Source: Guillardia theta CCMP2712 | Taxonomy: Eukaryota; Protista; Cryptophyta | Assembly (NCBI RefSeq): GCF_000315625.1 | Contig: NW_005434588.1 | Location: 62,001-126,000, forward strand | DNA: 64,000 nt | Reading direction: 5' to 3' | Shown: in pieces, positions 4,448 through 48,976 of the stretch | How the letters are laid out: each line of letters starts with the position of its first letter | Numbering within the stretch: position 1 is the stretch's first letter | The notes under the pieces: generated by a model | The model's input: only the letters and a program-made list of their open reading frames with translations | Told to the model about the DNA's origin: nothing | Database searches by the model: none | Position numbers and translations under genes: made by a program

Positions 4448-4654
4448 TCCCCCTACCTGTCAAAATCCACAAAACGAAAAAAAACCAGCTGAGCCTCGTC
4501 GGAGTTTCAGCGAGAGTGAACGAGATAGAGTTTGACGAGTCGAGCTCAAAGACAAGTTCGAAACAAGGAGGAGGAGCAGGAGGAGCAGGAGCAGGAGAAG
4601 GAGAAGGAGAAGGAGAAGGAAGAGTGAGGGGGCTCGAGTTCAAGCAGCAGATCC

Positions 4655-7600
4655 ATGACAGGAACAGCTACTGACGTGTGCGAGGCTGAACTCGACGCCT
4701 TGTTTCAGCATGTCAACTCTGCATACTGGAAGATGCCGTCAGTTGTGACTTGGAGCAGCAGGAGAACAGACAGGACGAAGAGACTGCGAGAGGCTTGGTG
4801 GGACGAGCTTCAGTTCCATGAGGGTTGGGCGGTCACACAAGGCCGTTGCGTTGCTCTGCCGCAAGAATGGAGCATTCAGTTCAAACTCCAAGTCCCCAGC
4901 TTGAATGGTGACATCTGTCAAATCGTCAGGTACCGACCATCTGCTGTAGAAACATCAAAACTTGAACGAGGCAACAAGGTGTTTGTGCTTGAGCCATCAA
5001 CATCGCTCAAAGAAAGTTCGAGTGACGACGTTCTGTGCAAGGAAGACAGGGACAAGAAGCGAGAAGGAGTGCTGGTTGACACATGCGGCGAGTTCAGTCT
5101 AGTAAAGATCGACGAGCAGAGACAGACATGGTACAGGACTACTTGTTTGCGTCAAACTATGAGGACAGTCAGGGGACTGGTAACTGACCACGTGCCGATC
5201 GAAGTGACAAGTACTAAACAATTTGTCAAGCCTTCACAAGCACATTTCTCTGATTCTTCTCATGACGTCGGACAGAAACTCTCTGAGAATTCAAAGCTGG
5301 TAGAGGTGGAATGGTCATCAAACATCAGAGGTTATCACAGGAAAGAAGATCTGGAGGCAGTAGAGGACGTGGAGCAGGAGATCGACTCATTGATATGTAT
5401 CCATCACGGTTTCTTGGGGTGTCGATTCAAAGGAAGGTTTTATCCGGCAGTTCCAGGAGTGAACTTGAACGATCTTGCTAGGGGGAACTATGACATTCAC
5501 GTTCGCAAGATGCAAGGCATGCTTCAGTTCATCGTTGATGACGTCATAGTCGGTATCTCCTTCTACCCAGGCCCTTGCGCTATCAGCTCATTCGGAAACG
5601 TGTATCGACTGCCATGCTTGCATTGCACACAAACACACATACAAGACGTGTGCGCTTTATGTGAATGCTGTAGCAGGGTGGGGGGAAGGAGATGCGGCAA
5701 CGCAGCTGCTCGTGACTCCAGCTGGAGTTTCTGTCATGTTCGTCTTGCCAGGCAGGCCTGCAGGTTGAAGGACATCAGGGGAGCAGAGAAGCAGCTGGGC
5801 CCTCTAGAGCTAGCACATGCCATCTATCAAACGATAAGCCAAGCTCACCCTATCGCCTTAAGTGACTTACAAGCTGAGTTGCTCGAGGACAGCAGGGCTT
5901 TTGCTGGATGCCTGCTTCAGCTACTGAAGCATCAGCCGCACGTGCTCGAGATTTTGATGGAAACAGCTCCAGAGCTTTTGCAGGGGATGGACGTAAGCAA
6001 AGAGATGAACTTCTACGGTGTCAAGGGGAGCATTGGAGCTCATTTCCTGCTGGTATCTCTGCAGTGCCGTCAGAAAAGTTTTGACACGTTGTCACGTTGT
6101 TTGGTGTGTCGGGTCGATTGGAGCGAACAGGTCAAGAGCTGTCAGAGATCAGAGGAACTTGCGACGATGATGATCCGCAATGTGTTGAAGTCGACGCCAC
6201 TACTGAACGGAGAGCAAGGGGACGTGACGTCTGAGTTCGAGTCAATGGTGGAAGAAACGATCCCATCCAGCTGGAGGGAGGGAGTCGAGTACTCCTTCGA
6301 CGCTCTAGCGATATTCTCTCATGGCGAGCTCTGCCTTGTAAGACGTTCCGACGGTTCGATTCGATTCGCAAGGGTGAGCAACGTGAGAAGTTCGATGTTG
6401 AAGGATTCTTCCTCTGCCAACTCCATCAGGTACGACTTGGACGTCAGCAAGGACGGGAAAGTCTCCAGAGACAACCAGAAACCGGGGGAACACATGGCAA
6501 AGATCCTGGCAAACCGTTCAAAGAATCACGTCACAGTGAGTGATGTAATAGCGCTGCTGCAATCAAACTCAGTCAAGATGTCTTGTGATGATTCTTTCAC
6601 CCTCGTTGAACTGCTGATGGAAGTTGAAGTTGCTGCCAGTGATGCAGTCATACCGATGCTCGAGCTGCTGCACGATATCAAGCTGAGCTCACCTCTGCTT
6701 ACATGGATCGTGTGTAGACTACTGGAGGAGGAAGAGACAAGCGCCAAATTCGGGTCTCTGAATCGCATGCTTTGCTCTATCACAAAGTTGCGATTCTCCA
6801 CTAGAAGGGAAGAGATCGTACAGCAAATCTTATCCGAGGGATTTCTCAAGAGGTTCACTATCAACATGGCTGACGCTTATCCTAAGCAGAAGGAATCTTT
6901 CTACAAGGAGAGCTGTGGTGAAGTCTTGACGCACAAGCTCATTCAGTCCTGCAGGTCATACTTGTATGACGGTTCTTCTCTTCTCCTTCCCCAGGGTGTT
7001 CAGTGGATGATGTTCCGCTGCAACCTGACCCTGTCAAGCAGAGTCAGTCACGTGCTAGTCAAAATCCTCCGCCCTTCTCCTGACTCCTCCCGTCTCAAAC
7101 GAAAGTCCTCCCCGTGGTTTCACCTCGCTTGGACCCCTCCCCGCTTCCTCCCCGCCCTCTCTCCTCGCCGATGCAGACGCCGCATGTACGAGCACGGCTT
7201 CGCCTACTGCCCCAGCAAGGGCGTCAAGTACAGCAGCGGCGGCAAGACCCCCTACGCGCAGAGGAGGCTCAAGCCCGGGGACGTGATCGCATGCTCGCTG
7301 GACTGCGAGAGGCGAGAGATCCGCTACTTGGTCAACGGGGAGGACCTGGGGGTAGCGTTCGGGGAGGAGGAGGTGACGGAGGAGGCGGTGGGGGAGGGGC
7401 TGAGGTTTACGGTGACGCTGGGGCCGGGGCAGGGGGTTGAGTTCGTGAGTACGGAGGAGGAGGAGGAGGACAAGAAGAGCAAAGGTGAAAGCTTGTTGGA
7501 GGTTTTTCAGTACGAGAGATCGATGAAGTCTTGGATACGAGTACCTCGTTCCTCTCAGCTCCTGCAGTCGTTGATCTTTGCTGCCCCTCAGCTGGACTTG

Positions 7601-10600
7601 TGCTCGCCTTGTGTAATACATCAGCCTGTGGAGGACATGCTTTCCTTTTTGTCCCTCGAAGGCCTGCAGCTTCATCTGCGAGCTAGCGGGAGAAGACTTG
7701 AGTGCCGGATAGAAGGCAAGACGGCAGTGGTTGTCAACGTCATACGACTTAAGGAACTTGCAACGTACGATGAGATTGAGCTCAACAACAGGTTCCGCTT
7801 CAAAGTGATGAAGGTCAAACATGAGATGAAAGTCATCCTGAAAGATTTCTGCCAGGCTCTAGATGTACCTTTGACACTTGACTGCCAGAGCTCCCAGCTA
7901 GACCGATGGAAAGCACTAGAGGTGTTGAAGTGCTTGAATGAGATTGAGTTTCTGTTTCAAGATCAAATCTTTCATCTCGTTGACGTTATCGTCTTTCTCT
8001 TGCTACAGCAGCAGCTCACGCTGACACAGATGGAGCAGATAGTGACTGAGATGTACGAGAGCTACAAGGACAGTCAAGGTTTCATTCCATGTAAAGTTGT
8101 GTGCGACCTGATCAAGACGCAAGGCAAGAACAAGTTCACAGCCGACAAGCTGCTCGTTGAAATGCTTTCTTTATCTTATGGCTCAGATATCAGATTAGAG
8201 ATGTCCAAGTGGAAGACGTTGAGAGAAGAAATGATTCAAGCTTTTGATGTTGACATATCAAATCCGACACAAATACTTCAAAGGATGCTGCAACCCAATC
8301 TCGACCTGACGAGTACCTGTTTGCTGAAATGCGATCGAGACATGTTTGACAGCATTGGAATGAAGCTTCTTCATCATCTCGCTACCCCAAACATCATCTA
8401 CAGCTTCGATGGCGACAGGCTGTGGCATTCTGTTTCAAACGCATATCCCTGCGTTACATATCGGGCAGGAAAGCACAGGAAGAGAGGGTTTGCCTTGTAT
8501 GCTGTCAAGGTGCTCCGAGAGACATCTGACGTCGGCAGTCGATACGATCCCTGGCTCCACCTCGCCTGGACGACACCAGCATATCACCCCAACACTCACC
8601 TGAGATGCAGACGCCGCATGTACGAGCACGGCTTCGCCTACTGCCCCAGCAAGGGCGTCAAGTACAGCAGCGGCGGCAAGACCCCCTACGCGCAGAGGAG
8701 GCTCAAGCCCGGGGACGTGATCGCATGCTCGCTGGACTGCGAGAGGCGAGAGATCCGCTACTTGGTCAACGGGGAGGACCTGGGGGTAGCGTTCGGGGAG
8801 GAGGAGGTGACGGAGGAGGCGGTGGGGGAGGGGCTGAGGTTTACGGTGACGCTGGGGCCGGGACAGGGGATCGAGTTTGTAGGAGGAAAGGAAGAAGGGA
8901 GAGAGGAGGAGGCGAGTGAGGGAGAGATCTTTCATCGCGATACCAACGAGTGGAGGAGAGTCATCAGCAAGGTAGACGACCTTAAGTTGCTCCGAGTCGC
9001 TCGGTCAGTCCTGCGATCTTTACAAGGGTCCTTGGACGTCGTAGTCTTGCAGGATGATTTCCGAGCTGGAGACTTGGTGGCAGTGAGAAACGAGATTCTG
9101 GATCCCCGATACGGGATGAGACTGCAGACAAGTTTGACATCAACGATAGGGAGAGTGAAGTCAGTTATGGGAGATGAACGAGAACAGATGAAAGGTACTA
9201 GTGACGTTCAAGTCTCAATCCTTGGCAGAGACTTCAAGTTTATCGCTCGTGAGTTGTACAGAGTGGATGCTGATGCTCGTCGAACAAGAGTGGAGAAAAG
9301 ACAGATGCTAATTCAAATGATAAACAGAAGAATCTTTGAGAGGAGAGGCGACTTGACGTTCATTGCACGTGTTGTCGAAGCTTTCTCTGACGTCGTCAGA
9401 GACAAACCTGAGATGTCTTCGATCATAGAGGCATGTTCGTGCGCTCTTGGGCAATCGGTGAGCAATCTTGATCAGTTGAATGTGCTTGCTCGCTTTCCAA
9501 TGGAGTGGAAATACCTTTCGTTATTACAGACGCTCAAGGTTGTAATGCGAACCGCATGGGCTGAGGGTCAACTAGAAAACTTGAAGAAGGCTCATCTCAA
9601 TCTCAGATGTATTTTAGAGGACGCAAAGATTTCTCAGCTCAACAATGTATCGCACATGATTGAAACATGCTTGCTGCCTTGCTTGGATTTACTTCCTTGC
9701 TGCCTAACATCGATGGGATCAAAGTTCAGCATCCATACTGAAGTAATGCTCGAGCTTGTAAGAATTGTGAACGAATTGATCCAGAAACATAATCCGCAAC
9801 ATAATGTTGCGATGTCAATGGGAAACTTAAGTTCTCTTGTTAAAATTCATCACCGATATCAAGAATTTGATAGCAACAAAAAAATGATAATTGAACAAAC
9901 TTGGGCAGACATCTTGCACAGTGCTGACTTGATAGTAAAACTCAGTGGTCCTGAGATATATCAAGGTACGCGGACACATGTGTCAGAGGATCTCTACAAA
10001 GTTGCGCTACAGATTGAAGACATGGCAGTTAGATCGATGATTCTTCTTATGCTCTACAAACATTGCTCTAACTTGAAGAGCAAGATTGTTGCTGAAGCAT
10101 TCTTCACGAGTCAATCAAGCTTGACTGATAACAGTGAGAGCAAACTACTTTTGCGACACTTGGCTGAGGACAGTACAAACTACCAGCAGGCAGACTTCTC
10201 CACGTTGACAGACGCAATCAAGCTGGCGATCAGAGCTGGGGTGGAGTTAAGTTCGCCATGGCAGATGTCAGGTGATGGAGAGGAGGCATCGACGGTAAGG
10301 CTGTCAATCTTGAGACTCGTTCTTGAGCAACAAGTCCCCGTGCTGAAGCAAACAAACAAGTTGAGAAACAGATCTCAAGACAACAACCTCATCATTCAGC
10401 CTGCTCCTGTGCTCTCCTCCGGTCGACATACCTTCCTCCTCAAGCTCCTCTCCCCCCTGCCCGCCTCCTCCCCCTCCCGTCTCTCCCCGTGGCTTCACCT
10501 CGCCTGGACCCCTCCCCGCTTCCTCCCCGCCCTCTCTCCTCGCCGATGCAGACGCCGCATGTACGAGCACGGCTTCGCCTACTGCCCCAGCAAGGGCGTC

Positions 10601-13462
10601 AAGTACAGCAGCGGCGGCAAGACCCCCTACGCGCAGAGGAGGCTCAAGCCCGGGGACGTGATCGCATGCTCGCTGGACTGCGAGAGGCGAGAGATCCGCT
10701 ACTTGGTCAACGGGGAGGACCTGGGGGTAGCGTTCGGGGAGGAGGAGGTGACGGAGGAGGCGTTGGGGGAGGGGCTGAGGTTTACGGTGACGCTGGGGCC
10801 GGGGCAGGGGGTCGAGCTTGTGAAGGTGACCAGATTTGCAGGCTCGGAGGAGGAGGAGGAGGAGAAGAGGGTTGAGGACCTTTCGTGGGAATATCTTGAA
10901 ATTCGATGTCAGACGTGCAACAACCTCTGGTGGAGCGAGCAAAACCTTGTTGAAAGCATTCAGCTCCTGCTGACTCATTTGAATATCGAGAATGTCATAC
11001 TTCCTCGTCCTCACGATTCAAACGTCCAGACGCAAGACTATAATCTCAAACTACTTTGTTTGAATTCTTCTGTTTGCTTAAACACACATCAGACAAGAAG
11101 GGCAAAAGGAAGTTTGACAGACGCGAAGAGACTAAGTGAGCCCTCAGGGATGTTTGAGATTGTGAAAGTCATCTTAGAGCTGATCAGAGCTTCTTCTTGC
11201 GACTCCAGTTCCTTCCAAAGTCTGTGCGTTTCCGTTCTTGCGATGATCGAACAAGAGGCTTGTACAATGTCACATTGCTTGTCAATCTTACAAGAACTCT
11301 ATGATGTTTGCTTTGGCTACAGCACGAACACTGACAACAATGTACATTCGTTTACCTCACAAGAATTAAGTTTTGAATGTTATCAATGCTCTCAATTGTT
11401 GTTGACCAAACGATGCGTTTATTGCCAGCAATGTCATCAATGCTGCATAACAGCAACTTGCAAACAACACTCACGGAGGTTCAAATCCGACAAACATGAA
11501 ATTCTCCTGTCGGAGATGTTCAAGCTACGCACGATAAAGACAAGCAATTGCATGAACTTGAAAGCAAGCATGGTAGAATATGCTTTCAGGTCATGTTATG
11601 CTAAGCCCAATAGCATATTGAGAGACAACATCGATGTGATATGCTGCATGTTGGGGTACGGGGGTAAAGGAGGTCAAGCCATCTCTCAACTCTGTGCAGC
11701 CTTGTCAACGCATCCAGATCTGATCAATACTCGAATAGCACGAGCAGGGCAGAGAGAAGCTTCGACAACGACTCTTGCAATGCGCATCCTTGAGGCATTG
11801 TTCAGAGACAGGAGCTGCCGCTATGACCGCACAAGTCTTCTCAACCTCTCCTCAACCTCCTCCTTGACCGCCCGAACAAGTCAGACCCTCTCCTCCGGTC
11901 GACATACCTTCCTCCTCAAGCTCCTCTCCCCCCTGCCCGCCTCCTCCCCCTCCCGTCTCTCCCCGTGGCTTCACCTCGCCTGGACCCCTCCCCGCTTCCT
12001 CCCCGCCCTCTCTCCTCGCCGATGCAGACGCCGCATGTACGAGCACGGCTTCGCCTACTGCCCCAGCAAGGGCGTCAAGTACAGCAGCGGCGGCAAGACC
12101 CCCTACGCGCAGAGGAGGCTCAAGCCCGGGGACGTGATCGCATGCTCGCTGGACTGCGAGAGGCGAGAGATCCGCTACTTGGTCAACGGGGAGGACCTGG
12201 GGGTAGCGTTCGGGGAGGAGGAGGTGACGGAGGAGGCGGTGGGGGAGGGGCTGAGGTTTACGGTGACGCTGGGGCCGGGGCAGGGGGTCAAGCTTGTAAA
12301 GGCGGAGGAGGAGGAGGAGGAGAGTGAGGGTCGAGAACGAGCATGGGAGATGTTAAGCTTTTACTATGAGGGAGAATGGTGTTATCTGAGAGCCCTTGAC
12401 CTTGAACTGCTATCGTTCGCTCATGTCATAGTCAGGCTTCTTGTAAACAACTCTCAATCTCAAGGCCTTGAGGTATTGAGACTGATGGGTGAAAACTCTT
12501 CTTTCTTGCTGTACGGCTCCAACTCAAAGGAGTTTCAGATGACAGGATCGCTCATTGATACGCTCTTAGATGAAAAAGTTTTGAGTTCGACATGTCTTAG
12601 TCATACCAAAGAAGTGACGGTTGTCGAGGAGTTGATCCAAAACCTTGAGGAGGTTGTCGGACAAGGGCTGAAGCCATGGATACAACTGATCGCTCACAAA
12701 CTTGTGAGGTACTGCTCTGAAACTCTTGATCAAACATTCAAACTTCGCTTTTTATCTTGCTTGATTCCTGCTTTTGTCAAAAACGGTCTTTTGCAATCTA
12801 TTGCCCCTGAGGTTTCAAGCAACGTCAGGGAGTCAAAGTGCGATGACAACCAACCATATCCAATCAAATACATCATACGCGTACTGACAGACTACCAGCA
12901 ACTTGCCTCTTGTCGTCACAGTCCGACTGGTTTCAAGTTACTCCATGTCTTGTTCAGGTCACTGGAATCATCCTATGAGATTTTCAAGCATTCAGACGGG
13001 CTGATTGTGCAAGGGCTGCCCTATCATTCCAAATCCATTCGATGTCAATCAACTCTTGAATCAGGCCGACATACCTTCCTCCTCAAGCTCCTCGCCCCCC
13101 TGCCCGCCTCCTCCCCCTCCCGTCTCTCCCCGTGGCTTCACCTCGCTTGGACCCCTCCCCGCTTCCTCCCCGCCCTCTCTCCTCGCCGATGCAGACGCCG
13201 CATGTACGAGCACGGCTTCGCCTACTGCCCCAGCAAGGGCGTCAAGTACAGCAGCGGCGGCAAGACCCCCTACGCGCAGAGGAGGCTCAAGCCCGGGGAC
13301 GTGATCGCATGCTCGCTGGACTGCGAGAGGCGAGAGATCCGCTACTTGGTCAACGGGGAGGACCTGGGGGTAGCGTTCGGGGAGGAGGAGGTGACGGAGG
13401 AGGCGGTGGGGGAGGGGCTGAGGTTTACGGTGACGCTGGGGCCGGGGCAGGGGTCGAGTTGA
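4655..13462 (+). CDS. N-terminal part of a giant Roco protein: five B30.2/SPRY-like domains, a Mib/HERC2 (KEG-type) SH3-like repeat and Cys-rich segments
   Basis: 2935-codon uninterrupted ORF with 5x 'GFAYCPSKGVKY..LKPGDVIACSLDCERREIRYLVNGEDLGVAF' (classic SPRY C-terminal signature GDVIGCxLD..NG..LGVAF). 'FRAGDLVAVRNEILDPRYG..TIGRVKSV' lies at ~9058-9170, and Cys/His clusters at ~5615-5700 and ~11378-11500. Confidence 0.85.
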   Translation: MTGTATDVCEAELDALFQHVNSAYWKMPSVVTWSSRRTDRTKRLREAWWDELQFHEGWAVTQGRCVALPQEWSIQFKLQVPSLNGDICQIVRYRPSAVETSKLERGNKVFVLEPSTSLKESSSDDVLCKEDRDKKREGVLVDTCGEFSLVKIDEQRQTWYRTTCLRQTMRTVRGLVTDHVPIEVTSTKQFVKPSQAHFSDSSHDVGQKLSENSKLVEVEWSSNIRGYHRKEDLEAVEDVEQEIDSLICIHHGFLGCRFKGRFYPAVPGVNLNDLARGNYDIHVRKMQGMLQFIVDDVIVGISFYPGPCAISSFGNVYRLPCLHCTQTHIQDVCALCECCSRVGGRRCGNAAARDSSWSFCHVRLARQACRLKDIRGAEKQLGPLELAHAIYQTISQAHPIALSDLQAELLEDSRAFAGCLLQLLKHQPHVLEILMETAPELLQGMDVSKEMNFYGVKGSIGAHFLLVSLQCRQKSFDTLSRCLVCRVDWSEQVKSCQRSEELATMMIRNVLKSTPLLNGEQGDVTSEFESMVEETIPSSWREGVEYSFDALAIFSHGELCLVRRSDGSIRFARVSNVRSSMLKDSSSANSIRYDLDVSKDGKVSRDNQKPGEHMAKILANRSKNHVTVSDVIALLQSNSVKMSCDDSFTLVELLMEVEVAASDAVIPMLELLHDIKLSSPLLTWIVCRLLEEEETSAKFGSLNRMLCSITKLRFSTRREEIVQQILSEGFLKRFTINMADAYPKQKESFYKESCGEVLTHKLIQSCRSYLYDGSSLLLPQGVQWMMFRCNLTLSSRVSHVLVKILRPSPDSSRLKRKSSPWFHLAWTPPRFLPALSPRRCRRRMYEHGFAYCPSKGVKYSSGGKTPYAQRRLKPGDVIACSLDCERREIRYLVNGEDLGVAFGEEEVTEEAVGEGLRFTVTLGPGQGVEFVSTEEEEEDKKSKGESLLEVFQYERSMKSWIRVPRSSQLLQSLIFAAPQLDLCSPCVIHQPVEDMLSFLSLEGLQLHLRASGRRLECRIEGKTAVVVNVIRLKELATYDEIELNNRFRFKVMKVKHEMKVILKDFCQALDVPLTLDCQSSQLDRWKALEVLKCLNEIEFLFQDQIFHLVDVIVFLLLQQQLTLTQMEQIVTEMYESYKDSQGFIPCKVVCDLIKTQGKNKFTADKLLVEMLSLSYGSDIRLEMSKWKTLREEMIQAFDVDISNPTQILQRMLQPNLDLTSTCLLKCDRDMFDSIGMKLLHHLATPNIIYSFDGDRLWHSVSNAYPCVTYRAGKHRKRGFALYAVKVLRETSDVGSRYDPWLHLAWTTPAYHPNTHLRCRRRMYEHGFAYCPSKGVKYSSGGKTPYAQRRLKPGDVIACSLDCERREIRYLVNGEDLGVAFGEEEVTEEAVGEGLRFTVTLGPGQGIEFVGGKEEGREEEASEGEIFHRDTNEWRRVISKVDDLKLLRVARSVLRSLQGSLDVVVLQDDFRAGDLVAVRNEILDPRYGMRLQTSLTSTIGRVKSVMGDEREQMKGTSDVQVSILGRDFKFIARELYRVDADARRTRVEKRQMLIQMINRRIFERRGDLTFIARVVEAFSDVVRDKPEMSSIIEACSCALGQSVSNLDQLNVLARFPMEWKYLSLLQTLKVVMRTAWAEGQLENLKKAHLNLRCILEDAKISQLNNVSHMIETCLLPCLDLLPCCLTSMGSKFSIHTEVMLELVRIVNELIQKHNPQHNVAMSMGNLSSLVKIHHRYQEFDSNKKMIIEQTWADILHSADLIVKLSGPEIYQGTRTHVSEDLYKVALQIEDMAVRSMILLMLYKHCSNLKSKIVAEAFFTSQSSLTDNSESKLLLRHLAEDSTNYQQADFSTLTDAIKLAIRAGVELSSPWQMSGDGEEASTVRLSILRLVLEQQVPVLKQTNKLRNRSQDNNLIIQPAPVLSSGRHTFLLKLLSPLPASSPSRLSPWLHLAWTPPRFLPALSPRRCRRRMYEHGFAYCPSKGVKYSSGGKTPYAQRRLKPGDVIACSLDCERREIRYLVNGEDLGVAFGEEEVTEEALGEGLRFTVTLGPGQGVELVKVTRFAGSEEEEEEKRVEDLSWEYLEIRCQTCNNLWWSEQNLVESIQLLLTHLNIENVILPRPHDSNVQTQDYNLKLLCLNSSVCLNTHQTRRAKGSLTDAKRLSEPSGMFEIVKVILELIRASSCDSSSFQSLCVSVLAMIEQEACTMSHCLSILQELYDVCFGYSTNTDNNVHSFTSQELSFECYQCSQLLLTKRCVYCQQCHQCCITATCKQHSRRFKSDKHEILLSEMFKLRTIKTSNCMNLKASMVEYAFRSCYAKPNSILRDNIDVICCMLGYGGKGGQAISQLCAALSTHPDLINTRIARAGQREASTTTLAMRILEALFRDRSCRYDRTSLLNLSSTSSLTARTSQTLSSGRHTFLLKLLSPLPASSPSRLSPWLHLAWTPPRFLPALSPRRCRRRMYEHGFAYCPSKGVKYSSGGKTPYAQRRLKPGDVIACSLDCERREIRYLVNGEDLGVAFGEEEVTEEAVGEGLRFTVTLGPGQGVKLVKAEEEEEESEGRERAWEMLSFYYEGEWCYLRALDLELLSFAHVIVRLLVNNSQSQGLEVLRLMGENSSFLLYGSNSKEFQMTGSLIDTLLDEKVLSSTCLSHTKEVTVVEELIQNLEEVVGQGLKPWIQLIAHKLVRYCSETLDQTFKLRFLSCLIPAFVKNGLLQSIAPEVSSNVRESKCDDNQPYPIKYIIRVLTDYQQLASCRHSPTGFKLLHVLFRSLESSYEIFKHSDGLIVQGLPYHSKSIRCQSTLESGRHTFLLKLLAPLPASSPSRLSPWLHLAWTPPRFLPALSPRRCRRRMYEHGFAYCPSKGVKYSSGGKTPYAQRRLKPGDVIACSLDCERREIRYLVNGEDLGVAFGEEEVTEEAVGEGLRFTVTLGPGQGSS
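7109..7440 (+). repeat. SPRY cassette copy 1
   Basis: Near-identical nucleotide sequence to copies 2-5. Confidence 0.95.
8550..8875 (+). repeat. SPRY cassette copy 2 (identical core starts ~8604)
   Basis: Near-identical core with a diverged 5' part. Confidence 0.95.
10412..10821 (+). repeat. SPRY cassette copy 3
   Basis: About 410 bp shared with copy 4; private V>L SNP (GCGTTG vs GCGGTG). Confidence 0.95.
11888..12297 (+). repeat. SPRY cassette copy 4
   Basis: About 410 bp shared with copy 3. Confidence 0.95.
13067..13458 (+). repeat. SPRY cassette copy 5 (1-nt deletion at 3' end)
   Basis: Near-identical to copies 3/4; reads CAGGGGTC versus CAGGGGGTC in those copies. Confidence 0.95.
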
Positions 13463-16400
13463 GAAATTCTGGAGAAGCTTTGGAGGACGCCGGGTACGAA
13501 TGTGTTGTGATAGGATCAGAGAGCGAGAGATGGTTTGCTTGCTCTAGTCAATATGAACATGCCAAGTCACTTTTGAGTTGGCTCATGCAGCAACGTTCAC
13601 AACAATCTTCAGATGACTTGTCAAGAAACCTTAAATGTTGCGTCTCTGATTTCATGCTCGACGATCAGGTTGGACTCAGTTTCAAACAAAACTTTCAGAA
13701 GTTTTTCTTTGAACTTGAGTTTGAGGCAGCAGAAGCAACGATGATGATAGAATCAAGGAGCAGCATCTTCAAGGCTTCTGAAGTTTGTCTTCCTCTCATT
13801 CCTTCATTGTACATTCACATGTGGTATGCAAACAAGATATCCCAACTCTCTCTCGTTCGCATTCAGCTCAGCGATATTCCAGCAGAGATATCTATACTCA
13901 GACTGCAAAGCCTCGACGTGTCTGAGAATCGTCTTAATCACCTTTCTCCGTCATTGTGTTTGGTGGTCACTCTCGAGATTTTGAGGTGTAACAACAACTT
14001 CTTGTCGATTCTCCCGGACGACATCGGGCTGCTTGTCAATCTTATCAAGCTAGAAGCAGCTCAGAACGCCCTGTCCTCCCTTCCTGACTCGCTCTTCTCT
14101 CTTGCTCGCCTTGAGGACCTCGACATCAGTGGCCCACCCTTGCCGAGAGAAAGGCTGTGCAGAAACTCAACAGCTGAGCTCGAGCTGGACAGCTTCCTCG
14201 GGTTCTTCCGTGAGGTTTCTTGCTGGGAGGAGATCGTTGGACGGTCGGAGCAGGAGGAGATGTTCTACCGACATGCGCAGGAGGGAGTGGTAGCGAGGGA
14301 GAGGCTCGTTGACTTAGAGGAAGAGATGCTGCACAAGTATTGGAGGTACAAGGGACGGAGACACGAGTCGTTCTCCTTCGATCCAGCCATCCTGACCATG
14401 CGGTCGTTGAGGCGCCTGAGCATGAGGAATGTTGGCATTCAAGGTAGGCTCCTGATACCTCGCCACGTCACCACGGGGAGCCTGGAGGAGGTGGACCTTT
14501 CGTACAATCAGATCAGCGATGTGAGTTTGACCTCTCAGTCTCTGCGGGGCCTCAAGCGCTTCTGCTTGGAGGGCAACCGGCTGCTCATCCCCGAGGAGGT
14601 GAAGAAGCGCGGAGAAGCTTCAGTCTTGAACTTCTTGAGGGGAAGGGCGGAAGCGAGTCAAGAGTCCTTCAAGCTGATGCTGTTCCTGCACGGGCTGGGA
14701 GGCGTCGGAAAGACTTGCCTGCTCGCGGCGCTCAAAGGCAAAGAGTTTGACCCCGACGGCGAAATGACGGACGGCATTGAGATCTCTTCTTGGAAGGTTA
14801 GGGTGGAGGAGGAGGAGGTCCAGTACCTCAAGCAAGCCTTGACCGAGAGCCAGCAGAATCAGGTCAGCCAGAGGCTCAGTCGCAAGCGCATCGAGGACTT
14901 GATGGGGGTCGAGATCGAGTTTGTGGTGCATGACTTTGCGGGACAGGAGGTCTACTACAACTCTCATCAACTCTTCCTTCACAACCGAGCTCTCGAGCTC
15001 GTCCTCTGGGACGTCCGGCGAGGGTTTGACAACAGCGGAGTTTGCTTCTGGCTGAACAACATCAAGACCTGCGCTCCAAGAGCTGCGATCATCATCGTGG
15101 GGACTAAGACAGATGAGATGGATACGCCGCCTCTGGACCTGCACGCGCTCTCTCAAAAGTTCCCTCAGGTCAAGGCATTTCACGCTGTGAGCTCGAAGAC
15201 GATGCGAGGGGTGGAGGACCTGAGGCGCCTGCTAGTCAAGCAGGCCCTGCTGGAGGAGCACGTGGGGCAGAGCATACCTCACAAGTGGTCGATCCTGGAA
15301 GACATCATCGTGCAAGAGGCAAGGTCGAGCAAGACTGGCTACGTTCGCTTCCCGACCCTCAGAGAGTGGGCCAGGTTGAGCGCCTTCAGCTCCGACGACG
15401 CCATCGAGGACGCTGCCGATTTCCTGCATGACATCGGGACGATCGTGAGGTTCTCAGACGAGGACGCGAGGCTGACGGGGCTGGACGACGTTGTCATCAC
15501 AGACAAGCAGTGGCTGGCTGACGTCATGAGCAGCATCATCACCTCCAAGTCTAGAGTTCACGTCCTGTCGCACGCAGACCTGTCCAGCATGTGGCAGGCG
15601 TTTCCCCCTGACGTTCATAGCAACCTCATCGACCTGCTCAAGAAGTTCGACCTGCTGGTGGAGACTGACAGTCGGAGCTTCCTCGTTCCCTGCCTCCTCC
15701 CCCTTGGCGCCCCTAGAGGAGAAGACCTTGAAGCTTTCACCCTCATCCCGGGAGAGCGGCTCTCCCTGTCCTACCGCACCTTCGCGCTCTCCTTCTGCCC
15801 CTACGGCTTCTTCAACCTCCTCCAGGCTCGTCTGCGTGACTTGGACGCCAGCAGGTTCCCCTGGTGCCGCGTCGGGATGTGGCGGAACGGCATGCCCATC
15901 GCGTCGTCCTACCATTCTCGAGGAGTTGTCATACTGCACCAAGAGGAAAACAAGGTTGAATGTACTTTCTCGGGAGAAGGAAAGGACAACTTGATCAGCG
16001 TGGTATCAGAGAGTATCTTCATCCTGCTCACCGATAAGTATCAGGTCACCTACGACGTCTTCTTGCCATGCCAAGGCTGCTTGGACGTCTGCCCTCGCGC
16101 TCCTCACATGTTTTCAAGCAACGTCACTCTCAAACGAGCCATGCAGAAGCATCAGATCTTCTTGCAGTGCCACAAGGAGTTTCACAACATCCCGGTCGCT
16201 CACTACCTGGCAGCCATGCCCCATTCGTCGCGAGTTTCTCAAGAGCAGCTGAGCTCAGTGCTGGAGGGCATCGGCTTGTGGAAGGCAACACACAGGGCGC
16301 ACGTGTACTTGAGCTATGCTCGAGGGGACGAGGAAGCGTTGCGAGCAGGTCTGCGGGTCAAGGCTCTCCTCCTAGAGCAGCTCATCGACGTCTGGTTCCC

Positions 16401-18159
16401 AACCCATGACTCGCCGGATGCCGTGAGAGCCAACGAGCTGGCCTTGTCCTCTGCTACCATCGTCATCGCCCTCATCACCAAGCGGTACTGCCTCCCGCAC
16501 GGGCTCGGGCTCAAGGAAATTCAGTACGCGGTGGAAGTCAAACCCAAGCCCGTCATCCCGGTGGTGGTGGAGGACGAGAGCCCGTCGTTTCCTCTCGCCT
16601 GGATGACTAGCTCTGTCGGGCTCCACCTGTGCGGCCTGCTGTACGTCGACCTGAGGGCGCGGGACGAGGAGCAATTTTCACTCGTTGCTCGAAGAACACA
16701 AGCGCTGCTGGCTGCTTCTGGAGTCAGAGGTGGCAGGAGCAGCGAGCACTTCGACTTCATGATCAGCTACAGCTGGTCCAACTGCGACAACGGGGAGGAG
16801 GCAGGGGAGGAGGGCGATACGAGGAGGGAGTTCTGGAGCCCCCGGCGGATCAAACGAGCGCTAGAGGAGAGCGCAGGGTCAGGCAAGCAGCTGCGAGGCT
16901 GGATCGATGTGGAGCAGCTGGGCAACCGACCAAGAGAGGGGCTGTATGAGGGGATACGACGAGGGCTGACTGAGTCTCAAGTGCTGGTAGTATGCATGAG
17001 TAACGAGTATGCCATGAGCAGGAACTGCAGCATGGAGTGCAGATATGCTCTGCTGCTCAACAAACCTGTCCTGCTAGCCCTTGTAGGAAGTGATGACAAC
17101 TCTCCCTTGCCTCCTGCCTGGAAGTCAACTGAGACTGGACTGTTGACAAGCCACCTTTGGTCTGAGATTAGCAAACAGGAAGAGCTGTTCTTTGACTTCA
17201 GGAGGGTGCGGAGCAAGTCACAGTTTGATGCGATCATATCGAGTTTGAAGAGAAAGATTGAAGAGATGCAACGGAACGACCAGGAAGCAAGTGAAACGCG
17301 AGCAGGTCAAGAGACGTCACCCACGACTATCGATCTGTCAGATTCAGTGGAGGAGCAGATGAAGTTTGGGAGGAGGATGGCTATTCAGTTCTTTCGCAGT
17401 CACTCTTCCTTCGGGTCTACCTTTCCCGTCCTCTGGGTCATCCAGTGGCAGCCGAAGGCTCAAGACACCCTCACAGCCTTCGACGCGTGGGAGGACAACG
17501 ACTACTTCTTGCGCCCTGTCTCTGAGACCCCCGACGCATGGGTGCTCGTGCCTCGTGCTCGGTTCAGGATTGACGACGCGCGTCATCGCATCAAGAGCTT
17601 GTCTTCCCTGCTCTTCCTCGTGGTCCGATGCCTTGCTGTCCTCCAACAAGGCGTCCTGTGCTCTCTCAGCAAGGTTGAAGACTCCAAGGGCGAGACTTCG
17701 GCGATGAAGAAGTTCCTGCGGTACGAGGAGTTGGAGGTTTTCCTTGAGGGCAGCAGCAAGGGAATGGTCGGGAGGGCAGAAGCGATTAGAGAGTCTCTTC
17801 AGCTGATCCACAACCTCGTCAAGAGCGACGACTCGTGGAGCTCGAGCTCGTCTGAGCTCAAACTCGAGGTCTTGCCGAGCAAAGAAGTCTTCTGGAGCTT
17901 TTGGAGCAAAGACCTTGTCCGAGATACAATCGATGCAGACTGGTTGGTCGAGTGGACGAGGCGATCTAACCAACTGGAGGAGGGAGGGAGGAGGAGCAGG
18001 CCGAGGGGCGTCACTTTGGATGAGCAAGTCATGATGGCAGAGACCTCAGTCGTACCATCAGATGTCACTGATGATCAGTCGAACATCAAGAGATTGAAGC
18101 AGATTCTTTCACGACAAGAGCTCTTGCTCAGTAAGTTCCCTCAGACTAGCATCAAGTGA
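13453..18159 (+). CDS. C-terminal part of the giant Roco protein: LRR-ROC GTPase-COR-TIR-TIR (continues the upstream ORF after a 1-nt frameshift)
   Basis: LRRs (LQSLDVSENRL, LEEVDLSYNQI). ROC motifs GLGGVGKT (14692-14715), TDGIEI, DFAGQEVYY, IVGTKTD, VSSKT. COR 'QWLADVMSSII..LIDLLKKFDL'. TIR-like 'HVYLSYAR' (~16300) and 'FDFMISYSWSN..WIDVEQL..SNEYAMSRNCSME' (~16750-17040). Confidence 0.9.
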   Translation, partial: VELRNSGEALEDAGYECVVIGSESERWFACSSQYEHAKSLLSWLMQQRSQQSSDDLSRNLKCCVSDFMLDDQVGLSFKQNFQKFFFELEFEAAEATMMIESRSSIFKASEVCLPLIPSLYIHMWYANKISQLSLVRIQLSDIPAEISILRLQSLDVSENRLNHLSPSLCLVVTLEILRCNNNFLSILPDDIGLLVNLIKLEAAQNALSSLPDSLFSLARLEDLDISGPPLPRERLCRNSTAELELDSFLGFFREVSCWEEIVGRSEQEEMFYRHAQEGVVARERLVDLEEEMLHKYWRYKGRRHESFSFDPAILTMRSLRRLSMRNVGIQGRLLIPRHVTTGSLEEVDLSYNQISDVSLTSQSLRGLKRFCLEGNRLLIPEEVKKRGEASVLNFLRGRAEASQESFKLMLFLHGLGGVGKTCLLAALKGKEFDPDGEMTDGIEISSWKVRVEEEEVQYLKQALTESQQNQVSQRLSRKRIEDLMGVEIEFVVHDFAGQEVYYNSHQLFLHNRALELVLWDVRRGFDNSGVCFWLNNIKTCAPRAAIIIVGTKTDEMDTPPLDLHALSQKFPQVKAFHAVSSKTMRGVEDLRRLLVKQALLEEHVGQSIPHKWSILEDIIVQEARSSKTGYVRFPTLREWARLSAFSSDDAIEDAADFLHDIGTIVRFSDEDARLTGLDDVVITDKQWLADVMSSIITSKSRVHVLSHADLSSMWQAFPPDVHSNLIDLLKKFDLLVETDSRSFLVPCLLPLGAPRGEDLEAFTLIPGERLSLSYRTFALSFCPYGFFNLLQARLRDLDASRFPWCRVGMWRNGMPIASSYHSRGVVILHQEENKVECTFSGEGKDNLISVVSESIFILLTDKYQVTYDVFLPCQGCLDVCPRAPHMFSSNVTLKRAMQKHQIFLQCHKEFHNIPVAHYLAAMPHSSRVSQEQLSSVLEGIGLWKATHRAHVYLSYARGDEEALRAGLRVKALLLEQLIDVWFPTHDSPDAVRANELALSSATIVIALITKRYCLPHGLGLKEIQYAVEVKPKPVIPVVVEDESPSFPLAWMTSSVGLHLCGLLYVDLRARDEEQFSLVARRTQALLAASGVRGGRSSEHFDFMISYSWSNCDNGEEAGEEGDTRREFWSPRRIKRALEESAGSGKQLRGWIDVEQLGNRPREGLYEGIRRGLTESQVLVVCMSNEYAMSRNCSMECRYALLLNKPVLLALVGSDDNSPLPPAWKSTETGLLTSHLWSEISKQEELFFDFRRVRSKSQFDAIISSLKRKIEEMQRNDQEASETRAGQETSPTTIDLSDSVEEQMKFGRRMAIQFFRSHSSFGSTFPVLWVIQWQPKAQDTLTAFDAWEDNDYFLRPVSETPDAWVLVPRARFRIDDARHRIKSLSSLLFLVVRCLAVLQQGVLCSLSKVEDSKGETSAMKKFLRYEELEVFLEGSSKGMVGRAEAIRESLQLIHNLVKSDDSWSSSSSELKLEVLPSKEVFWSFWSKDLVRDTIDADWLVEWTRRSNQLEEGGRRSRPRGVTLDEQVMMAETSVVPSDVTDDQSNIKRLKQILSRQELLLSKFPQTSIK

Positions 18160-18456
18160 ATTAAAGCTAGCTAAATCAATAAAGAAAGTCTTCGAGCTCA
18201 TTGGTTTTGGGCCCGATGGAAATTGAGATGCAGTACATGGGGTGTATGCTTTTATAGTGTATAGCAGGTGCGAGGCGCTAAGATGAGAGGACGAGAGAAG
18301 GGAGAGGAAGCGAGGAGTGTTGGAGACAGAAAGAGAGTCGAGAAGAGGGGAGAGGGGAAGCGGGAAGGTTAGATGTAAGGTGAGGCTAGGTGAAAGGGGT
18401 AAAAGCAGGGACAAAGGAAAGGGAAGGTAAAGGATTGACGTCATTTCTACCTCTAG

Positions 18457-45173: not shown

Positions 45174-45974
45174 NNNNNNNNNNNNNNNNNNNNNNNNNNN
45201 NNNNNNNNNNNNNNNNNNNNNNNNNNNNNNNNNNNNNNNNNNNNNNNNNNNNNNNNNNNNNNNNNNNNNNNNNNNNNNNNNNNNNNNNNNNNNNNNNNNN
45301 NNNNNNNNNNNNNNNNNNNNNNNNNNNNNNNNNNNNNNNNNNNNNNNNNNNNNNNNNNNNNNNNNNNNNNNNNNNNNNNNNNNNNNNNNNNNNNNNNNNN
45401 NNNNNNNNNNNNNNNNNNNNNNNNNNNNNNNNNNNNNNNNNNNNNNNNNNNNNNNNNNNNNNNNNNNNNNNNNNNNNNNNNNNNNNNNNNNNNNNNNNNN
45501 NNNNNNNNNNNNNNNNNNNNNNNNNNNNNNNNNNNNNNNNNNNNNNNNNNNNNNNNNNNNNNNNNNNNNNNNNNNNNNNNNNNNNNNNNNNNNNNNNNNN
45601 NNNNNNNNNNNNNNNNNNNNNNNNNNNNNNNNNNNNNNNNNNNNNNNNNNNNNNNNNNNNNNNNNNNNNNNNNNNNNNNNNNNNNNNNNNNNNNNNNNNN
45701 NNNNNNNNNNNNNNNNNNNNNNNNNNNNNNNNNNNNNNNNNNNNNNNNNNNNNNNNNNNNNNNNNNNNNNNNNNNNNNNNNNNNNNNNNNNNNNNNNNNN
45801 NNNNNNNNNNNNNNNNNNNNNNNNNNNNNNNNNNNNNNNNNNNNNNNNNNNNNNNNNNNNNNNNNNNNNNNNNNNNNNNNNNNNNNNNNNNNNNNNNNNN
45901 NNNNNNNNNNNNNNNNNNNNNNNNNNNNNNNNNNNNNNNNNNNNNNNNNNNNNNNNNNNNNNNNNNNNNNNNNN
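45174..45974. other. Assembly gap (other gaps at ~43905-44005 and ~48642-48871)
   Basis: Runs of N, each adjacent to simple repeats. Confidence 1.
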
Positions 45975-46106
45975 NGAGGAGAGGAGAGGAGAGGAGAGGA
46001 GAGGAGAGGAGAGGAGACGAGACGAGATGAGACGAGATGAGACGAGACGAGAAGGGAAGGGAAGGGAAGGTAATGAATTGGATGAGATGAGTTGAGATGA
46101 GTTGAG

Positions 46107-48468: not shown

Positions 48469-48976
48469 GAGCTGGGTATGAAGAAGATAGGAGAGGGTAC
48501 GGGGAGGAAAGGATGGAGATTCACGATGGGAGCGAACTGAAATTCGTATGTGGCTCCTATACTGAAAGACGAGGAGTGACAGACAACAAATTTACAAAAC
48601 CTCTTTTGATATCCTTTTCCTGCTCCTGCTCCTGCTCCTACNNNNNNNNNNNNNNNNNNNNNNNNNNNNNNNNNNNNNNNNNNNNNNNNNNNNNNNNNNN
48701 NNNNNNNNNNNNNNNNNNNNNNNNNNNNNNNNNNNNNNNNNNNNNNNNNNNNNNNNNNNNNNNNNNNNNNNNNNNNNNNNNNNNNNNNNNNNNNNNNNNN
48801 NNNNNNNNNNNNNNNNNNNNNNNNNNNNNNNNNNNNNNNNNNNNNNNNNNNNNNNNNNNNNNNNNNNNNNNCCGTCTGAAAAGTCTGTGGACCCCCTCAT
48901 TCCTGCGGTCAATAGTTACTATAGGATCGGACAGAGATGGTAAGGAAGGCTTGCCAACAACTTAAGTGCGGCGCTC

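What the first reader, a model, noticed from the sequence alone, without database searches (positions are those of the whole stretch)
4655..18159. Giant intronless 5xSPRY-LRR-ROC-COR-TIR-TIR Roco protein: candidate algal innate-immune receptor
Seen: two abutting ORFs that fuse into ~4500 aa if one G is added, spanning 13.5 kb with no intron needed while most neighbours are broken by many short introns. Established: Roco GTPases with LRRs are proposed immune sensors in brown algae; TIR domains are immune adaptors or NADases; B30.2/SPRY domains are target-recognition modules in TRIM proteins and fish NLRs. Inference: a multi-SPRY sensor arm wired to a GTPase switch and tandem TIR effectors. I do not know this architecture from a described system.
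Basis: partly seen in the sequence, partly recalled or inferred. Interest (0 to 1): 0.88.

Follow-up and report, generated by a model that had tools for sequence, protein, structure and literature searches.

The report
Giant SPRY-armed Roco-TIR algal gene
A single 13.5-kb intron-free gene of the cryptophyte alga Guillardia theta encodes a ~4,500-residue GTPase-switch protein with five near-identical SPRY modules and two NAD-cleaving-type TIR domains. It is a real and unusually armed variant of a known protein family, but an immune role is still only an inference.

Summary
ORF A (4655-13462) and ORF B (13132-18159) are one gene. Two independent read-derived contig sets carry an extra G in the run at 13450-13453, so the break is an assembly error and the product is about 4,501 aa. 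Pfam confirms five SPRY domains, LRR, Roc, COR-A, COR-B and two TIR_2 domains. The GTPase motifs are intact and both TIRs keep the catalytic-position Glu. The organism is Guillardia theta CCMP2712; the public model GUITHDRAFT_115574 (UniProt L1IR75, 1,825 aa) is a truncated fragment of this gene. Transcript-derived proteins of Hanusia phi match both the N-terminal arm (from Met1 into SPRY1) and the LRR-Roc-COR-TIR-TIR half (47-65% identity). The five SPRY cores share exact 218-351-bp tracts, have GC3 of 0.90 and sit between unrelated spacers, which indicates gene conversion. The scan noted this homogenisation, the G shortage and the TIR glutamates before, on this same stretch. The LRR-Roc-COR-TIR core is not new: it is widespread in bacteria and reported in sea anemones and a red alga, and G. 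theta has at least ten other Roc-COR-TIR genes. The multi-SPRY arm appears new. Expression in culture is near zero. Immune function remains inferred.

The parts
4655..7114 (+). Start codon and 820-aa N-terminal unique region (sp0), no Pfam family
   Evidence: An in-frame TGA lies at 4625-4627. The region is homologous from Met1 to Hanusia phi P0015 (E 1.5e-84, 28% identity, colinear) and to P0016 (54% identity). Pfam finds nothing.
7115..7435 (+). SPRY core 1
   Evidence: Pfam SPRY, five stretches, 209.8 bits in total. Exact tracts of 258-317 bp are shared with the other copies. GC3 is 0.90.
7436..8551 (+). Unique spacer 1 (372 aa)
   Evidence: No similarity to the other spacers. No Pfam family. 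GC3 is 0.58.
8552..8869 (+). SPRY core 2 (most divergent upstream flank)
   Evidence: Best Pfam stretch is aa 1305-1411.
8870..10489 (+). Unique spacer 2 (540 aa)
   Evidence: no family and no relatives found.
10490..10810 (+). SPRY core 3
   Evidence: A 351-bp exact tract is shared with copy 4 (10412-10762 vs 11888-12238).
10811..11965 (+). Unique spacer 3 (385 aa, Cys-rich stretch)
   Evidence: no family and no relatives found.
11966..12286 (+). SPRY core 4
   Evidence: The closest solved SPRYs are RyR1 SPRY2, HERC1 and RanBP9/10.
12287..13132 (+). Unique spacer 4 (282 aa)
13133..13453 (+). SPRY core 5
   Evidence: Word depth in independent runs is about 4x the flanks (237-255 vs 62), consistent with several genomic copies.
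13450..13453 (+). G run that is one G short in this assembly (apparent frameshift)
   Evidence: read laying shows 'put in behind 13449: G' in both contigs that bridge the site (X1 and X2). Copies 1, 3 and 4 have five Gs.
13453..14631 (+). Post-SPRY linker and interrupted LRR region
   Evidence: Pfam LRR_4 at 4.2e-10 and LRR_8 at 4.3e-08. Conserved in Hanusia P0002 and P0003.
14632..15267 (+). Roc GTPase with a ~45-aa insert: P-loop GLGGVGKT 14692-14715, DFAGQE 14932-14949, GTKTDE 15100-15117, VSSKT 15187-15201
   Evidence: Pfam Roc 67.9 bits. The motifs are invariant in the Hanusia orthologues apart from one residue each in the G1 and G4 stretches of P0003.
15277..16200 (+). COR-A (15277-15699) and COR-B (15775-16200)
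   Evidence: Pfam COR-A 72 bits and COR-B 47.1 bits, both over their cut-offs.
16303..16677 (+). TIR domain 1; catalytic-position Glu codon 16516-16518 (LKEIQ)
   Evidence: Pfam TIR_2 41.2 bits. The Glu is invariant in an 8-sequence TIR alignment. A profile of that alignment matches Cat1 and AbTIR NADases, with this column on their Glu.
16744..17166 (+). TIR domain 2; catalytic-position Glu codon 17035-17037 (SMECR)
   Evidence: Pfam TIR_2 35.9 bits; ThsB_TIR weak. Alignment evidence as for TIR1.
17302..18159 (+). Conserved 285-aa C-terminal domain of unknown fold, plus TGA stop (18157-18159)
   Evidence: 41-54% identical to the Hanusia orthologues, with many invariant residues. No Pfam or Atlas hit. 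The AF2 model is unusable, pLDDT 33.

Best explanation
The region is one intron-free nuclear gene of Guillardia theta CCMP2712. It encodes a cytosolic Roco-family protein of about 4,501 aa. The apparent split into two ORFs is a one-base error of the reference assembly.

Anatomy (shown):
- An 820-aa lineage-specific N-terminal region.
- Five SPRY domains of the RyR/HERC1 type, separated by four unrelated 280-540-aa spacers.
- An interrupted LRR.
- A Roc GTPase with intact G1-G5 motifs.
- COR-A and COR-B.
- Two TIR domains that both keep the catalytic-position glutamate.
- A conserved 285-aa C-terminal domain of unknown fold.

The five SPRY cores are kept almost identical at the DNA level by intragenic gene conversion. 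This has also driven their third-codon GC to 0.90 (inferred from pattern).

Mechanism (inferred from family knowledge):
- The SPRY arm and the LRR bind a target or hold the protein auto-inhibited.
- Target binding changes the nucleotide state of Roc and the COR-mediated self-association.
- This brings TIR domains together so that they cleave NAD+, giving ADPR/cADPR-type products or NAD+ depletion as a stress, defence or cell-death output.

The gene is a highly derived member of the LRR-Roc-COR-TIR branch of Roco proteins. It is not a member of the separately expanded G. theta Roc-COR-TIR family.
For: One gene:
- Both contigs that bridge 13449 (runs X1 and X2, different years and studies) carry the extra G.
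- The fused frame has no stop.
- The region homologous to the Hanusia Roco half begins about 10 aa after SPRY5, leaving no room for an intergenic region.

Real, constrained gene:
- Hanusia phi proteins match the N-terminal arm from Met1 into SPRY1 (P0015, E 1.5e-84; P0016, 54% identity).
- They also match the whole Roco-TIR-TIR-C-terminal half (P0002 59-65%, P0003 47-52%), with near-invariant GTPase motifs (one residue each differs in G1 and G4 of P0003) and an invariant TIR Glu.

Domains: Pfam scores are over cut-off for SPRY x5, LRR, Roc, COR-A, COR-B and TIR_2 x2.

TIR catalytic position:
- The Glu is invariant in alignment A3.
- The A3 profile matches the NADase TIRs Cat1 and AbTIR (E 1e-10 to 1e-8) with that column aligned to their Glu.

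Gene conversion:
- Exact tracts of 218-351 bp are shared between all copy pairs, while the spacers are unrelated.
- The block occurs only five times in the genome, all within this gene.
- GC3 is 0.90 in the blocks, 0.51-0.58 in the spacers and 0.66-0.77 in the Roco half.
- Hanusia SPRY1 is at the same position but only about 60% identical.

Family context:
- Bacterial LRR-Roc-COR-TIR_2 clusters score 0.95-0.97 by protein-language-model features.
- A TIR from another G. theta Roc-domain protein (L1IYH1; Roc, EF-hand, weak COR-A) makes cADPR and depletes NAD+ in E. coli (preprint 10.64898/2026.04.20.719644).
Against: - No transcript spanning the gene was seen. An RNA run of the species gave 3 reads on 6 kb (6% of the run read), and ten RNA-labelled contig sets held none of its words.
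- The Hanusia Roco-half proteins start with Met just after the SPRY position. This could mean a separate gene there. However, the internal fragment P0016 also starts with Met, so the predictions appear trimmed to the first Met.
- No enzymatic, GTPase or binding data exist for this protein.
- Its TIRs show no BLAST similarity to the tested L1IYH1 TIR.
- No PADLOC family matches.
- A single-copy, well-conserved gene with identical SPRYs does not look like a diversifying immune receptor.
- The spacers and the C-terminal domain have no recognisable fold.
Confidence: 0.6

Rival explanations
1. Same single gene, but not an immune sensor. It would be a housekeeping or signalling Roco scaffold, for example in NAD+/cADPR-Ca2+ signalling, trafficking or the cytoskeleton as for LRRK2. 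The SPRY arm would be a fixed multivalent docking platform, and the TIRs would be regulated messenger synthases or adaptors.
For: - The gene is single-copy in G. theta.
- It is 47-65% identical across the whole Roco half in Hanusia, and two paralogues are retained there.
- Its SPRYs are homogenised rather than diversified.
- Other G. theta multi-SPRY giants are HECT or WW proteins, i.e. ordinary interaction scaffolds.
- Roc-COR is closest, outside cryptophytes, to a dictyostelid Roco kinase and to LRRK2-type proteins.
Against: - Near-silent expression in culture fits an inducible or guard-type gene better than a housekeeping one.
- The TIR_2 domains are closest to bacterial defence-type NADase TIRs.
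- The core architecture is typical of bacterial proteins with TIR effectors.
Confidence: 0.28
2. The locus yields two products in vivo: the SPRY arm and a ~1,550-aa LRR-Roc-COR-TIR-TIR protein. This would happen by internal transcription or translation start, or because the two are separate adjacent genes in the lineage and only appear fused in G. theta.
For: Hanusia P0002 and P0003 both begin with Met within about 15 aa of where SPRY5 ends. No read or contig from RNA bridges the junction.
Against: - With the extra G the frame is continuous, with no stop, no spacer and no ATG at the equivalent position. The first in-frame ATG is about 45 codons downstream.
- The N-termini of P0002 and P0003 carry the same hydrophobic-...-W motif that follows every SPRY copy in G. 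theta.
- P0015 ends 20 aa into the repeat core, and the internal fragment P0016 also starts with Met. This is the pattern expected from assembly breaks at repeats followed by trimming to the first Met.
Confidence: 0.08
3. The frameshift is real in the organism, so the gene is a pseudogene or a recently split gene.
For: The reference assembly reads four Gs. Expression is almost nil.
Against: Both bridging contigs, from two independent data sets, have five Gs. No other stop or frameshift occurs in 13.5 kb. The orthologues are conserved.
Confidence: 0.03
4. The identity of the SPRY blocks is an assembly artefact, i.e. collapsed or copied consensus.
For: This is a draft assembly with gaps elsewhere in the window.
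Against: Each copy has unique flanks and slightly different boundaries and variants. Independent runs show about 4x depth over the block, and separate unitigs enter it from different flanks.
Confidence: 0.02

Closest known systems
Bacterial LRR-Roc-COR-TIR_2 proteins (uncharacterised; e.g. 'COR domain-containing protein' of Verrucomicrobiae, P0012; clusters in Bacteroidota, Cyanobacteriota, Acidobacteriota)
   Same: They have the same core order, LRR, Roc, COR-A, COR-B, TIR_2. The TIR Glu is conserved.
   Different: They are 700-1,200 aa with a single TIR, and have no SPRY arm and no C-terminal domain. Identity over Roc-COR is only 21-26%. Their function is also untested.
Roco family in the strict sense (LRRK2, Dictyostelium Roco kinases, Chlorobium CtRoco)
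   Same: Tandem Roc-COR with a preceding LRR. Giant N-terminal scaffolding arm, as in LRRK2. The best non-cryptophyte match is a dictyostelid Roco (29% identity, E 6e-56).
   Different: The output domain is a tandem TIR instead of a kinase. The arm is built of SPRYs and orphan spacers instead of ARM/ANK repeats.
G. theta Roc-COR-TIR_2 paralogue family (at least 10 ORFs of ~1,200-1,370 aa) and the Roc-EF-hand-TIR protein L1IYH1, whose TIR makes cADPR
   Same: Same genome. Long intron-free ORFs combine Roc(-COR) with a C-terminal TIR. TIR enzymatic activity has been shown for L1IYH1 (preprint 10.64898/2026.04.20.719644).
   Different: Only 23-26% identity in Roc-COR, and not found at E below 1e-5 except for one locus. 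They have a single TIR and no Pfam SPRY or LRR in the tested ORF. The L1IYH1 TIR is not BLAST-similar to these TIRs.
Actiniarian NG1 (LRR-Roc/Ras-COR-TIR_2; PMC5094078) and Chondrus TPR-ROCO-TIR (PMC11378527)
   Same: These are eukaryotic Roco-TIR combinations that have been proposed as immune genes.
   Different: They have no SPRY arm and a single TIR. Sequence relationship was not tested here.
Plant TNLs / SARM1 (TIR NADase effectors activated by oligomerisation)
   Same: A TIR with catalytic Glu acts as the output of a nucleotide-switch sensor. This is a 'works like' resemblance.
   Different: The switch is Roc-COR, not NB-ARC, and there are no ARM/SAM domains. This gene is not a STAND NTPase: the NB-ARC hit scores only 12.7 bits, below cut-off.
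TRIM5alpha / fish NLR-B30.2; ryanodine receptor and HERC1 SPRY domains
   Same: SPRY acts as a protein-recognition module. Several SPRYs occur in a giant protein, as in RyR. The best solved matches are RyR1 SPRY2, HERC1 and RanBP9/10.
   Different: No PRY subdomain was detected, so this is not the TRIM/NLR B30.2 type. The five SPRYs are identical in sequence, unlike the three divergent SPRYs of RyR.

Membership tests
Roco proteins | Roc GTPase domain immediately followed by a COR domain | tested here: met
   Pfam Roc 67.9 bits, COR-A 72 bits and COR-B 47.1 bits, all over their cut-offs and contiguous.
Roco proteins | Intact nucleotide-binding motifs G1, G3, G4 and G5 | tested here: met
   GLGGVGKT, DFAGQE, GTKTDE and VSSKT are present. 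They are invariant in two Hanusia orthologues apart from one residue each in the G1 and G4 stretches of P0003. GTP binding itself cannot be tested with these tools.
TIR-domain NADases | TIR fold | tested here: met
   TIR_2 scores 41.2 and 35.9 bits against a cut-off of 28. The profile matches solved TIRs.
TIR-domain NADases | Catalytic glutamate at the conserved position | tested here: met
   The Glu in LKEIQ (16516-16518) and in SMECR (17035-17037) falls in the single invariant Glu column of A3. That column aligns with the Glu of the AbTIR and Cat1 entries.
TIR-domain NADases | NAD+ cleavage activity | not testable with these tools
   Activity has been shown only for an unrelated G. theta TIR, L1IYH1 (preprint). 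There is no sequence similarity to it.
SPRY domain | Match to the SPRY profile over the gathering score | tested here: met
   Five stretches, 209.8 bits in total. In the six-frame search each copy scores 45-52 bits.
B30.2 (PRY-SPRY) of TRIM / NLR-C receptors | PRY subdomain N-terminal to SPRY | tested here: not met
   No PRY family appears in the Pfam scans at E up to 0.01 or 1. The nearest solved SPRYs are RyR, HERC1 and RanBP9.
NLR / STAND immune receptors | NB-ARC or NACHT NTPase | tested here: not met
   Only P-loop-level hits below cut-off were found: NB-ARC 12.7 bits and nSTAND6 14.8 bits.
Known anti-phage defence systems (PADLOC) | Match to a PADLOC model | tested here: not met
   No family matched either half at E up to 0.01.
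Lineage-expanded, diversifying immune receptor repertoire | Multiple recent paralogues or variable recognition modules | tested here: not met
   In the own-genome search, sp0 and Roc-COR find only this locus plus weak distant hits. The SPRYs are homogenised.

The most novel reading that the evidence does not exclude
The five sequence-identical SPRY modules are spaced 280-540 aa apart and kept identical by gene conversion. They would form a multivalent, avidity-based sensor for a repetitive surface, such as a viral capsid lattice or a polymeric host guardee. Engagement would flip the Roc-COR switch and assemble the tandem TIRs into an NADase. This would be an algal receptor combining TRIM5alpha-like lattice recognition with TNL/SARM1-like output, on a GTPase chassis inherited from bacterial-type LRR-Roc-COR-TIR proteins.
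Probability: 0.12. Interest if true: 0.85.

Novelty: new variant of a known kind. Interest (0 to 1): 0.55.

Why it matters
- It corrects a public gene model from 1,825 aa to about 4,501 aa.
- It defines what appears to be the first Roco-TIR protein with a multi-SPRY arm.
- It is a concrete candidate for testing whether Roc-COR can serve as the molecular switch of a TIR-based sensor in a eukaryote outside plants and animals. TIR enzymatic signalling is currently being mapped across eukaryotes, including one G. theta TIR.
- The SPRY cassettes are a clean natural case of intragenic concerted evolution with a GC-biased-conversion signature inside a single reading frame. This is of interest for repeat-protein evolution and as a warning for transcriptome and genome assembly.

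Tried and rejected
- AlphaFold2 on the C-terminal domain (3-sequence alignment) and on the 820-aa N-terminal region gave pLDDT 33 and 35. These models are unusable, so no fold search was run.
- An ESM-Atlas feature search of spacer 2 and of the C-terminal domain gave no usable hit.
- Word-based homologue searches with spacer 2 plus SPRY3, and with spacer 3, found nothing. A blank here says little.
- phmmer of the TIR pair against PDB found nothing. Only the profile search worked.
- PADLOC found nothing.
- The look-up of encoding contigs for P0001, P0002 and P0015 found nothing on record. I therefore could not inspect the Hanusia DNA upstream of P0002.
- A metagenome scan with alignment A2 found no relative.
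- A sixth, degenerate SPRY-like region in aa ~180-320 of the N-terminal region looks plausible by eye and aligns in register. hhalign gives probability 0.5% and E 0.11, so it is not claimed.
- Loose ends and a 296-nt 'joint' at 17976-18312 looked like a dispersed repeat. The own-genome search finds only this locus, and the cause is GA-rich low-complexity words.
- I considered the SPRY block as a mobile cassette or introner-like element and rejected it. It has only five copies, all in this gene, it encodes nearly the whole Pfam SPRY domain, and SPRY1 is at the same position in Hanusia.
- I considered the tested TIR L1IYH1 as a close paralogue and rejected it. It is a Roc-EF-hand-TIR protein at C63 with no BLAST similarity to these TIRs.
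- No robust Roc-COR phylogeny was built because there were too few sequences. Only pairwise scores are reported.
Full report
**1. Observation**

The + strand carries ORF A (4655-13462, 2,935 aa) and ORF B (13132-18159, 1,675 aa). Frame A ends ...TLGPGQGSS*. Frame B reads VELRNSGEALEDAGYE... from nt 13453.

I laid one RNA run and three contig sets on 12701-18700. The only contigs that bridge the site carry a G inserted behind 13449. One is a 5,393-nt contig of X1 (2021, depth 62). The other is a 1,880-nt contig of X2 (2011, another study; even coverage over coding and downstream sequence, so it is DNA). Copies 1, 3 and 4 of the same repeat have five Gs at this place.

The window's four-G run is therefore an assembly error. 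The true frame is continuous: 2,933 + 1,568 = 4,501 aa. An in-frame TGA lies 27 nt upstream of ATG 4655.

**2. Organism and public annotation**

The assembly has 87,145,349 bp in 669 contigs. The C-terminal half is 100% identical to GUITHDRAFT_115574 / XP_005825290.1 / UniProt L1IR75 of Guillardia theta CCMP2712.

That 1,825-aa model starts inside SPRY4 and skips the frameshift with an invented intron. An exhaustive HMMER search with the first 820 aa returned no G. theta protein. The N-terminal arm therefore seems to be unannotated.

**3. Domains**

Pfam gives the following:
- SPRY x5, 209.8 bits in total
- LRR_4 and LRR_8
- Roc, 67.9 bits
- COR-A, 72 bits
- COR-B, 47.1 bits
- TIR_2 twice, 41.2 and 35.9 bits

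The Roc motifs GLGGVGKT, DFAGQE, GTKTDE and VSSKT are intact.

Both TIRs have a Glu in the one invariant Glu column of an eight-sequence TIR alignment. A profile of that alignment matches the NADase TIRs Cat1 and AbTIR at E 1e-10 to 1e-8, with that column on their Glu.

Three parts have no family: the 820-aa N-terminal region, the four spacers and the last 285 aa.

The nearest solved SPRYs are RyR1 SPRY2, HERC1 and RanBP9/10. No PRY was found. No NB-ARC or NACHT hit reaches its cut-off. No PADLOC model matches.

**4. Conservation and gene structure**

Transcript-derived proteins of Hanusia phi cover both ends of the gene.
- P0015 (870 aa) aligns from Met1 through the N-terminal region and stops 20 aa into the SPRY1 core (E 1.5e-84; 28% identity).
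- P0016 is 54% identical to aa 628-756.
- P0002 (1,547 aa; 59-65% identity) and P0003 (1,550 aa; 47-52% identity) cover LRR-Roc-COR-TIR-TIR and the C-terminal domain colinearly. They start just after the SPRY position.

Three things follow. ATG 4655 is the true start. Neither end needs introns. Both halves are expressed and under constraint in the sister species.

The Hanusia contigs end or begin at the SPRY block. This is the pattern expected if a repeated block breaks short-read assembly there too (inference). The Met at the start of P0002 and P0003 is weak evidence for a separate gene, because the obviously internal fragment P0016 also starts with Met.

**5. The SPRY cassettes**

- All ten copy pairs share exact tracts of 218-351 bp.
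- The core is identical except for two substitutions and the assembly indel.
- The spacers are mutually unrelated.
- The block occurs only five times in the genome, all in this gene.
- Independent runs show about 4x depth over it.
- GC3 is 0.90 in the blocks, 0.51-0.58 in the spacers and 0.66-0.77 in the Roco half. It is 0.46-0.82 in five other long G. theta ORFs.
- Hanusia has SPRY1 at the same position, but it is only about 60% identical.

Together this indicates ongoing intragenic gene conversion with GC bias. It does not indicate recent insertion or a mobile cassette.

Other multi-SPRY giants of G. theta show no such identical repeats. These are a 3,218-aa SPRY-HECT ORF and a WW + SPRY x4 ORF.

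**6. Family context**

G. theta has at least ten further ORFs of about 1,200-1,370 aa with COR-A followed by TIR_2. It also has an LRR-Roc-COR-kinase ORF.

This gene is not one of that family. Its Roc-COR finds none of them at E below 1e-5 except a 37% match over 84 aa. In pairwise tests it is closer to a dictyostelid Roco (29%, E 6e-56), to metagenomic LRR-Roc-COR(-TIR) proteins and to fish LRRK2.

LRR-Roc-COR-TIR_2 is widespread in bacteria, with many clusters of 50-106 members. The combination is described in sea anemones as NG1 (PMC5094078). A TPR-ROCO-TIR is noted in Chondrus (PMC11378527).

A 2026 preprint shows that the TIR of G. theta L1IYH1 makes cADPR and depletes NAD+ in E. coli. 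I located that gene at C63. It is a Roc-EF-hand-(weak COR-A)-TIR protein, and its TIR is not BLAST-similar to the TIRs here. L1IR75 is not in that paper's tables. I found no paper that combines SPRY with Roc-COR.

**7. Expression**

An RNA-seq run of the species gave 3 reads on 6 kb, with about 6% of the run read. Ten RNA-labelled contig sets hold essentially none of the gene's words. The gene is nearly silent in culture. No transcript bridging the junction was seen.

**8. Interpretation**

Shown:
- One intact, conserved, intron-free gene.
- The domain order.
- An intact GTPase and intact TIR catalytic positions.
- Homogenised SPRYs.

Inferred:
- The SPRY/LRR arm senses or docks a partner.
- Roc-COR acts as the switch.
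- The TIRs are the NAD+-cleaving output.
- The role is in defence or stress.

An immune role is plausible, given the defence-type TIRs, the silent expression and the bacterial-type core. It is not demonstrated. The single-copy, conserved, non-diversified nature of the gene equally fits a dedicated signalling scaffold.

**9. Verdict**

The finding is real and the architecture call is right. The core is a known kind. The five-SPRY arm, its concerted evolution, the tandem TIR and the corrected 4,501-aa model are new. I rate it a new variant of a known kind, of moderate interest.

Noticed in passing
window:4000-4650: A purine-rich (GA) region with 9-bp periodic degenerate repeats lies directly upstream of the start codon. 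It gives long spurious ORFs on both strands. It may be promoter or 5'UTR low-complexity sequence.
   Followed up: no
window:414-3206 (+): A 930-aa open frame with no Pfam family lies just upstream of the giant gene. It may be another intron-poor orphan gene.
   Followed up: partly
window:6239-6394 (aa 529-580 of the protein): A ~50-aa motif (W.EG.EY.F....F..GE.CLV.RSDGS.RF..V) is conserved in Hanusia. It is also found at G000:C3:763059-763385 and twice in ~289-aa metagenomic proteins (P0017-P0019). It looks like an undescribed small beta-rich domain.
   Followed up: partly
window:5200-5620 (aa ~180-320): A possible sixth, degenerate SPRY-like segment. It aligns in register with the SPRY cassettes, but hhalign is not significant (E 0.11).
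   Followed up: yes
L002 (G000:C23:173625-180920, - strand): A 2,432-aa intron-free ORF with LRR-Roc-COR-A-protein kinase, i.e. an LRRK-like Roco kinase in G. theta.
   Followed up: partly
L004/L006 (G000:C73:235555-245211, - strand) and L005:3849-7397: Two other multi-SPRY giants. One is a 3,218-aa open frame with about five SPRYs, Laminin_G_3 and the start of a HECT domain. The other is a 1,182-aa WW + 4xSPRY ORF. Neither has identical internal repeats.
   Followed up: partly
L023:1024-5175 (G000:C63): The gene of L1IYH1, whose TIR was shown to make cADPR, is a Roc, EF-hand pair, weak COR-A, TIR protein in a 1,383-aa open frame. A 78%-identical paralogue lies at C33:44214.
   Followed up: partly
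window:43906-44005, 45174-45975, 48642-48871: Assembly gaps (runs of N). The window around 44-46 kb also has very low GC (0.31).
   Followed up: no
window:13300-16300 (run X6): A 2023 run labelled freshwater metagenome holds 38% of the sampled words of this marine alga's gene. This suggests a near-identical cryptophyte or a contaminant in that sample.
   Followed up: no
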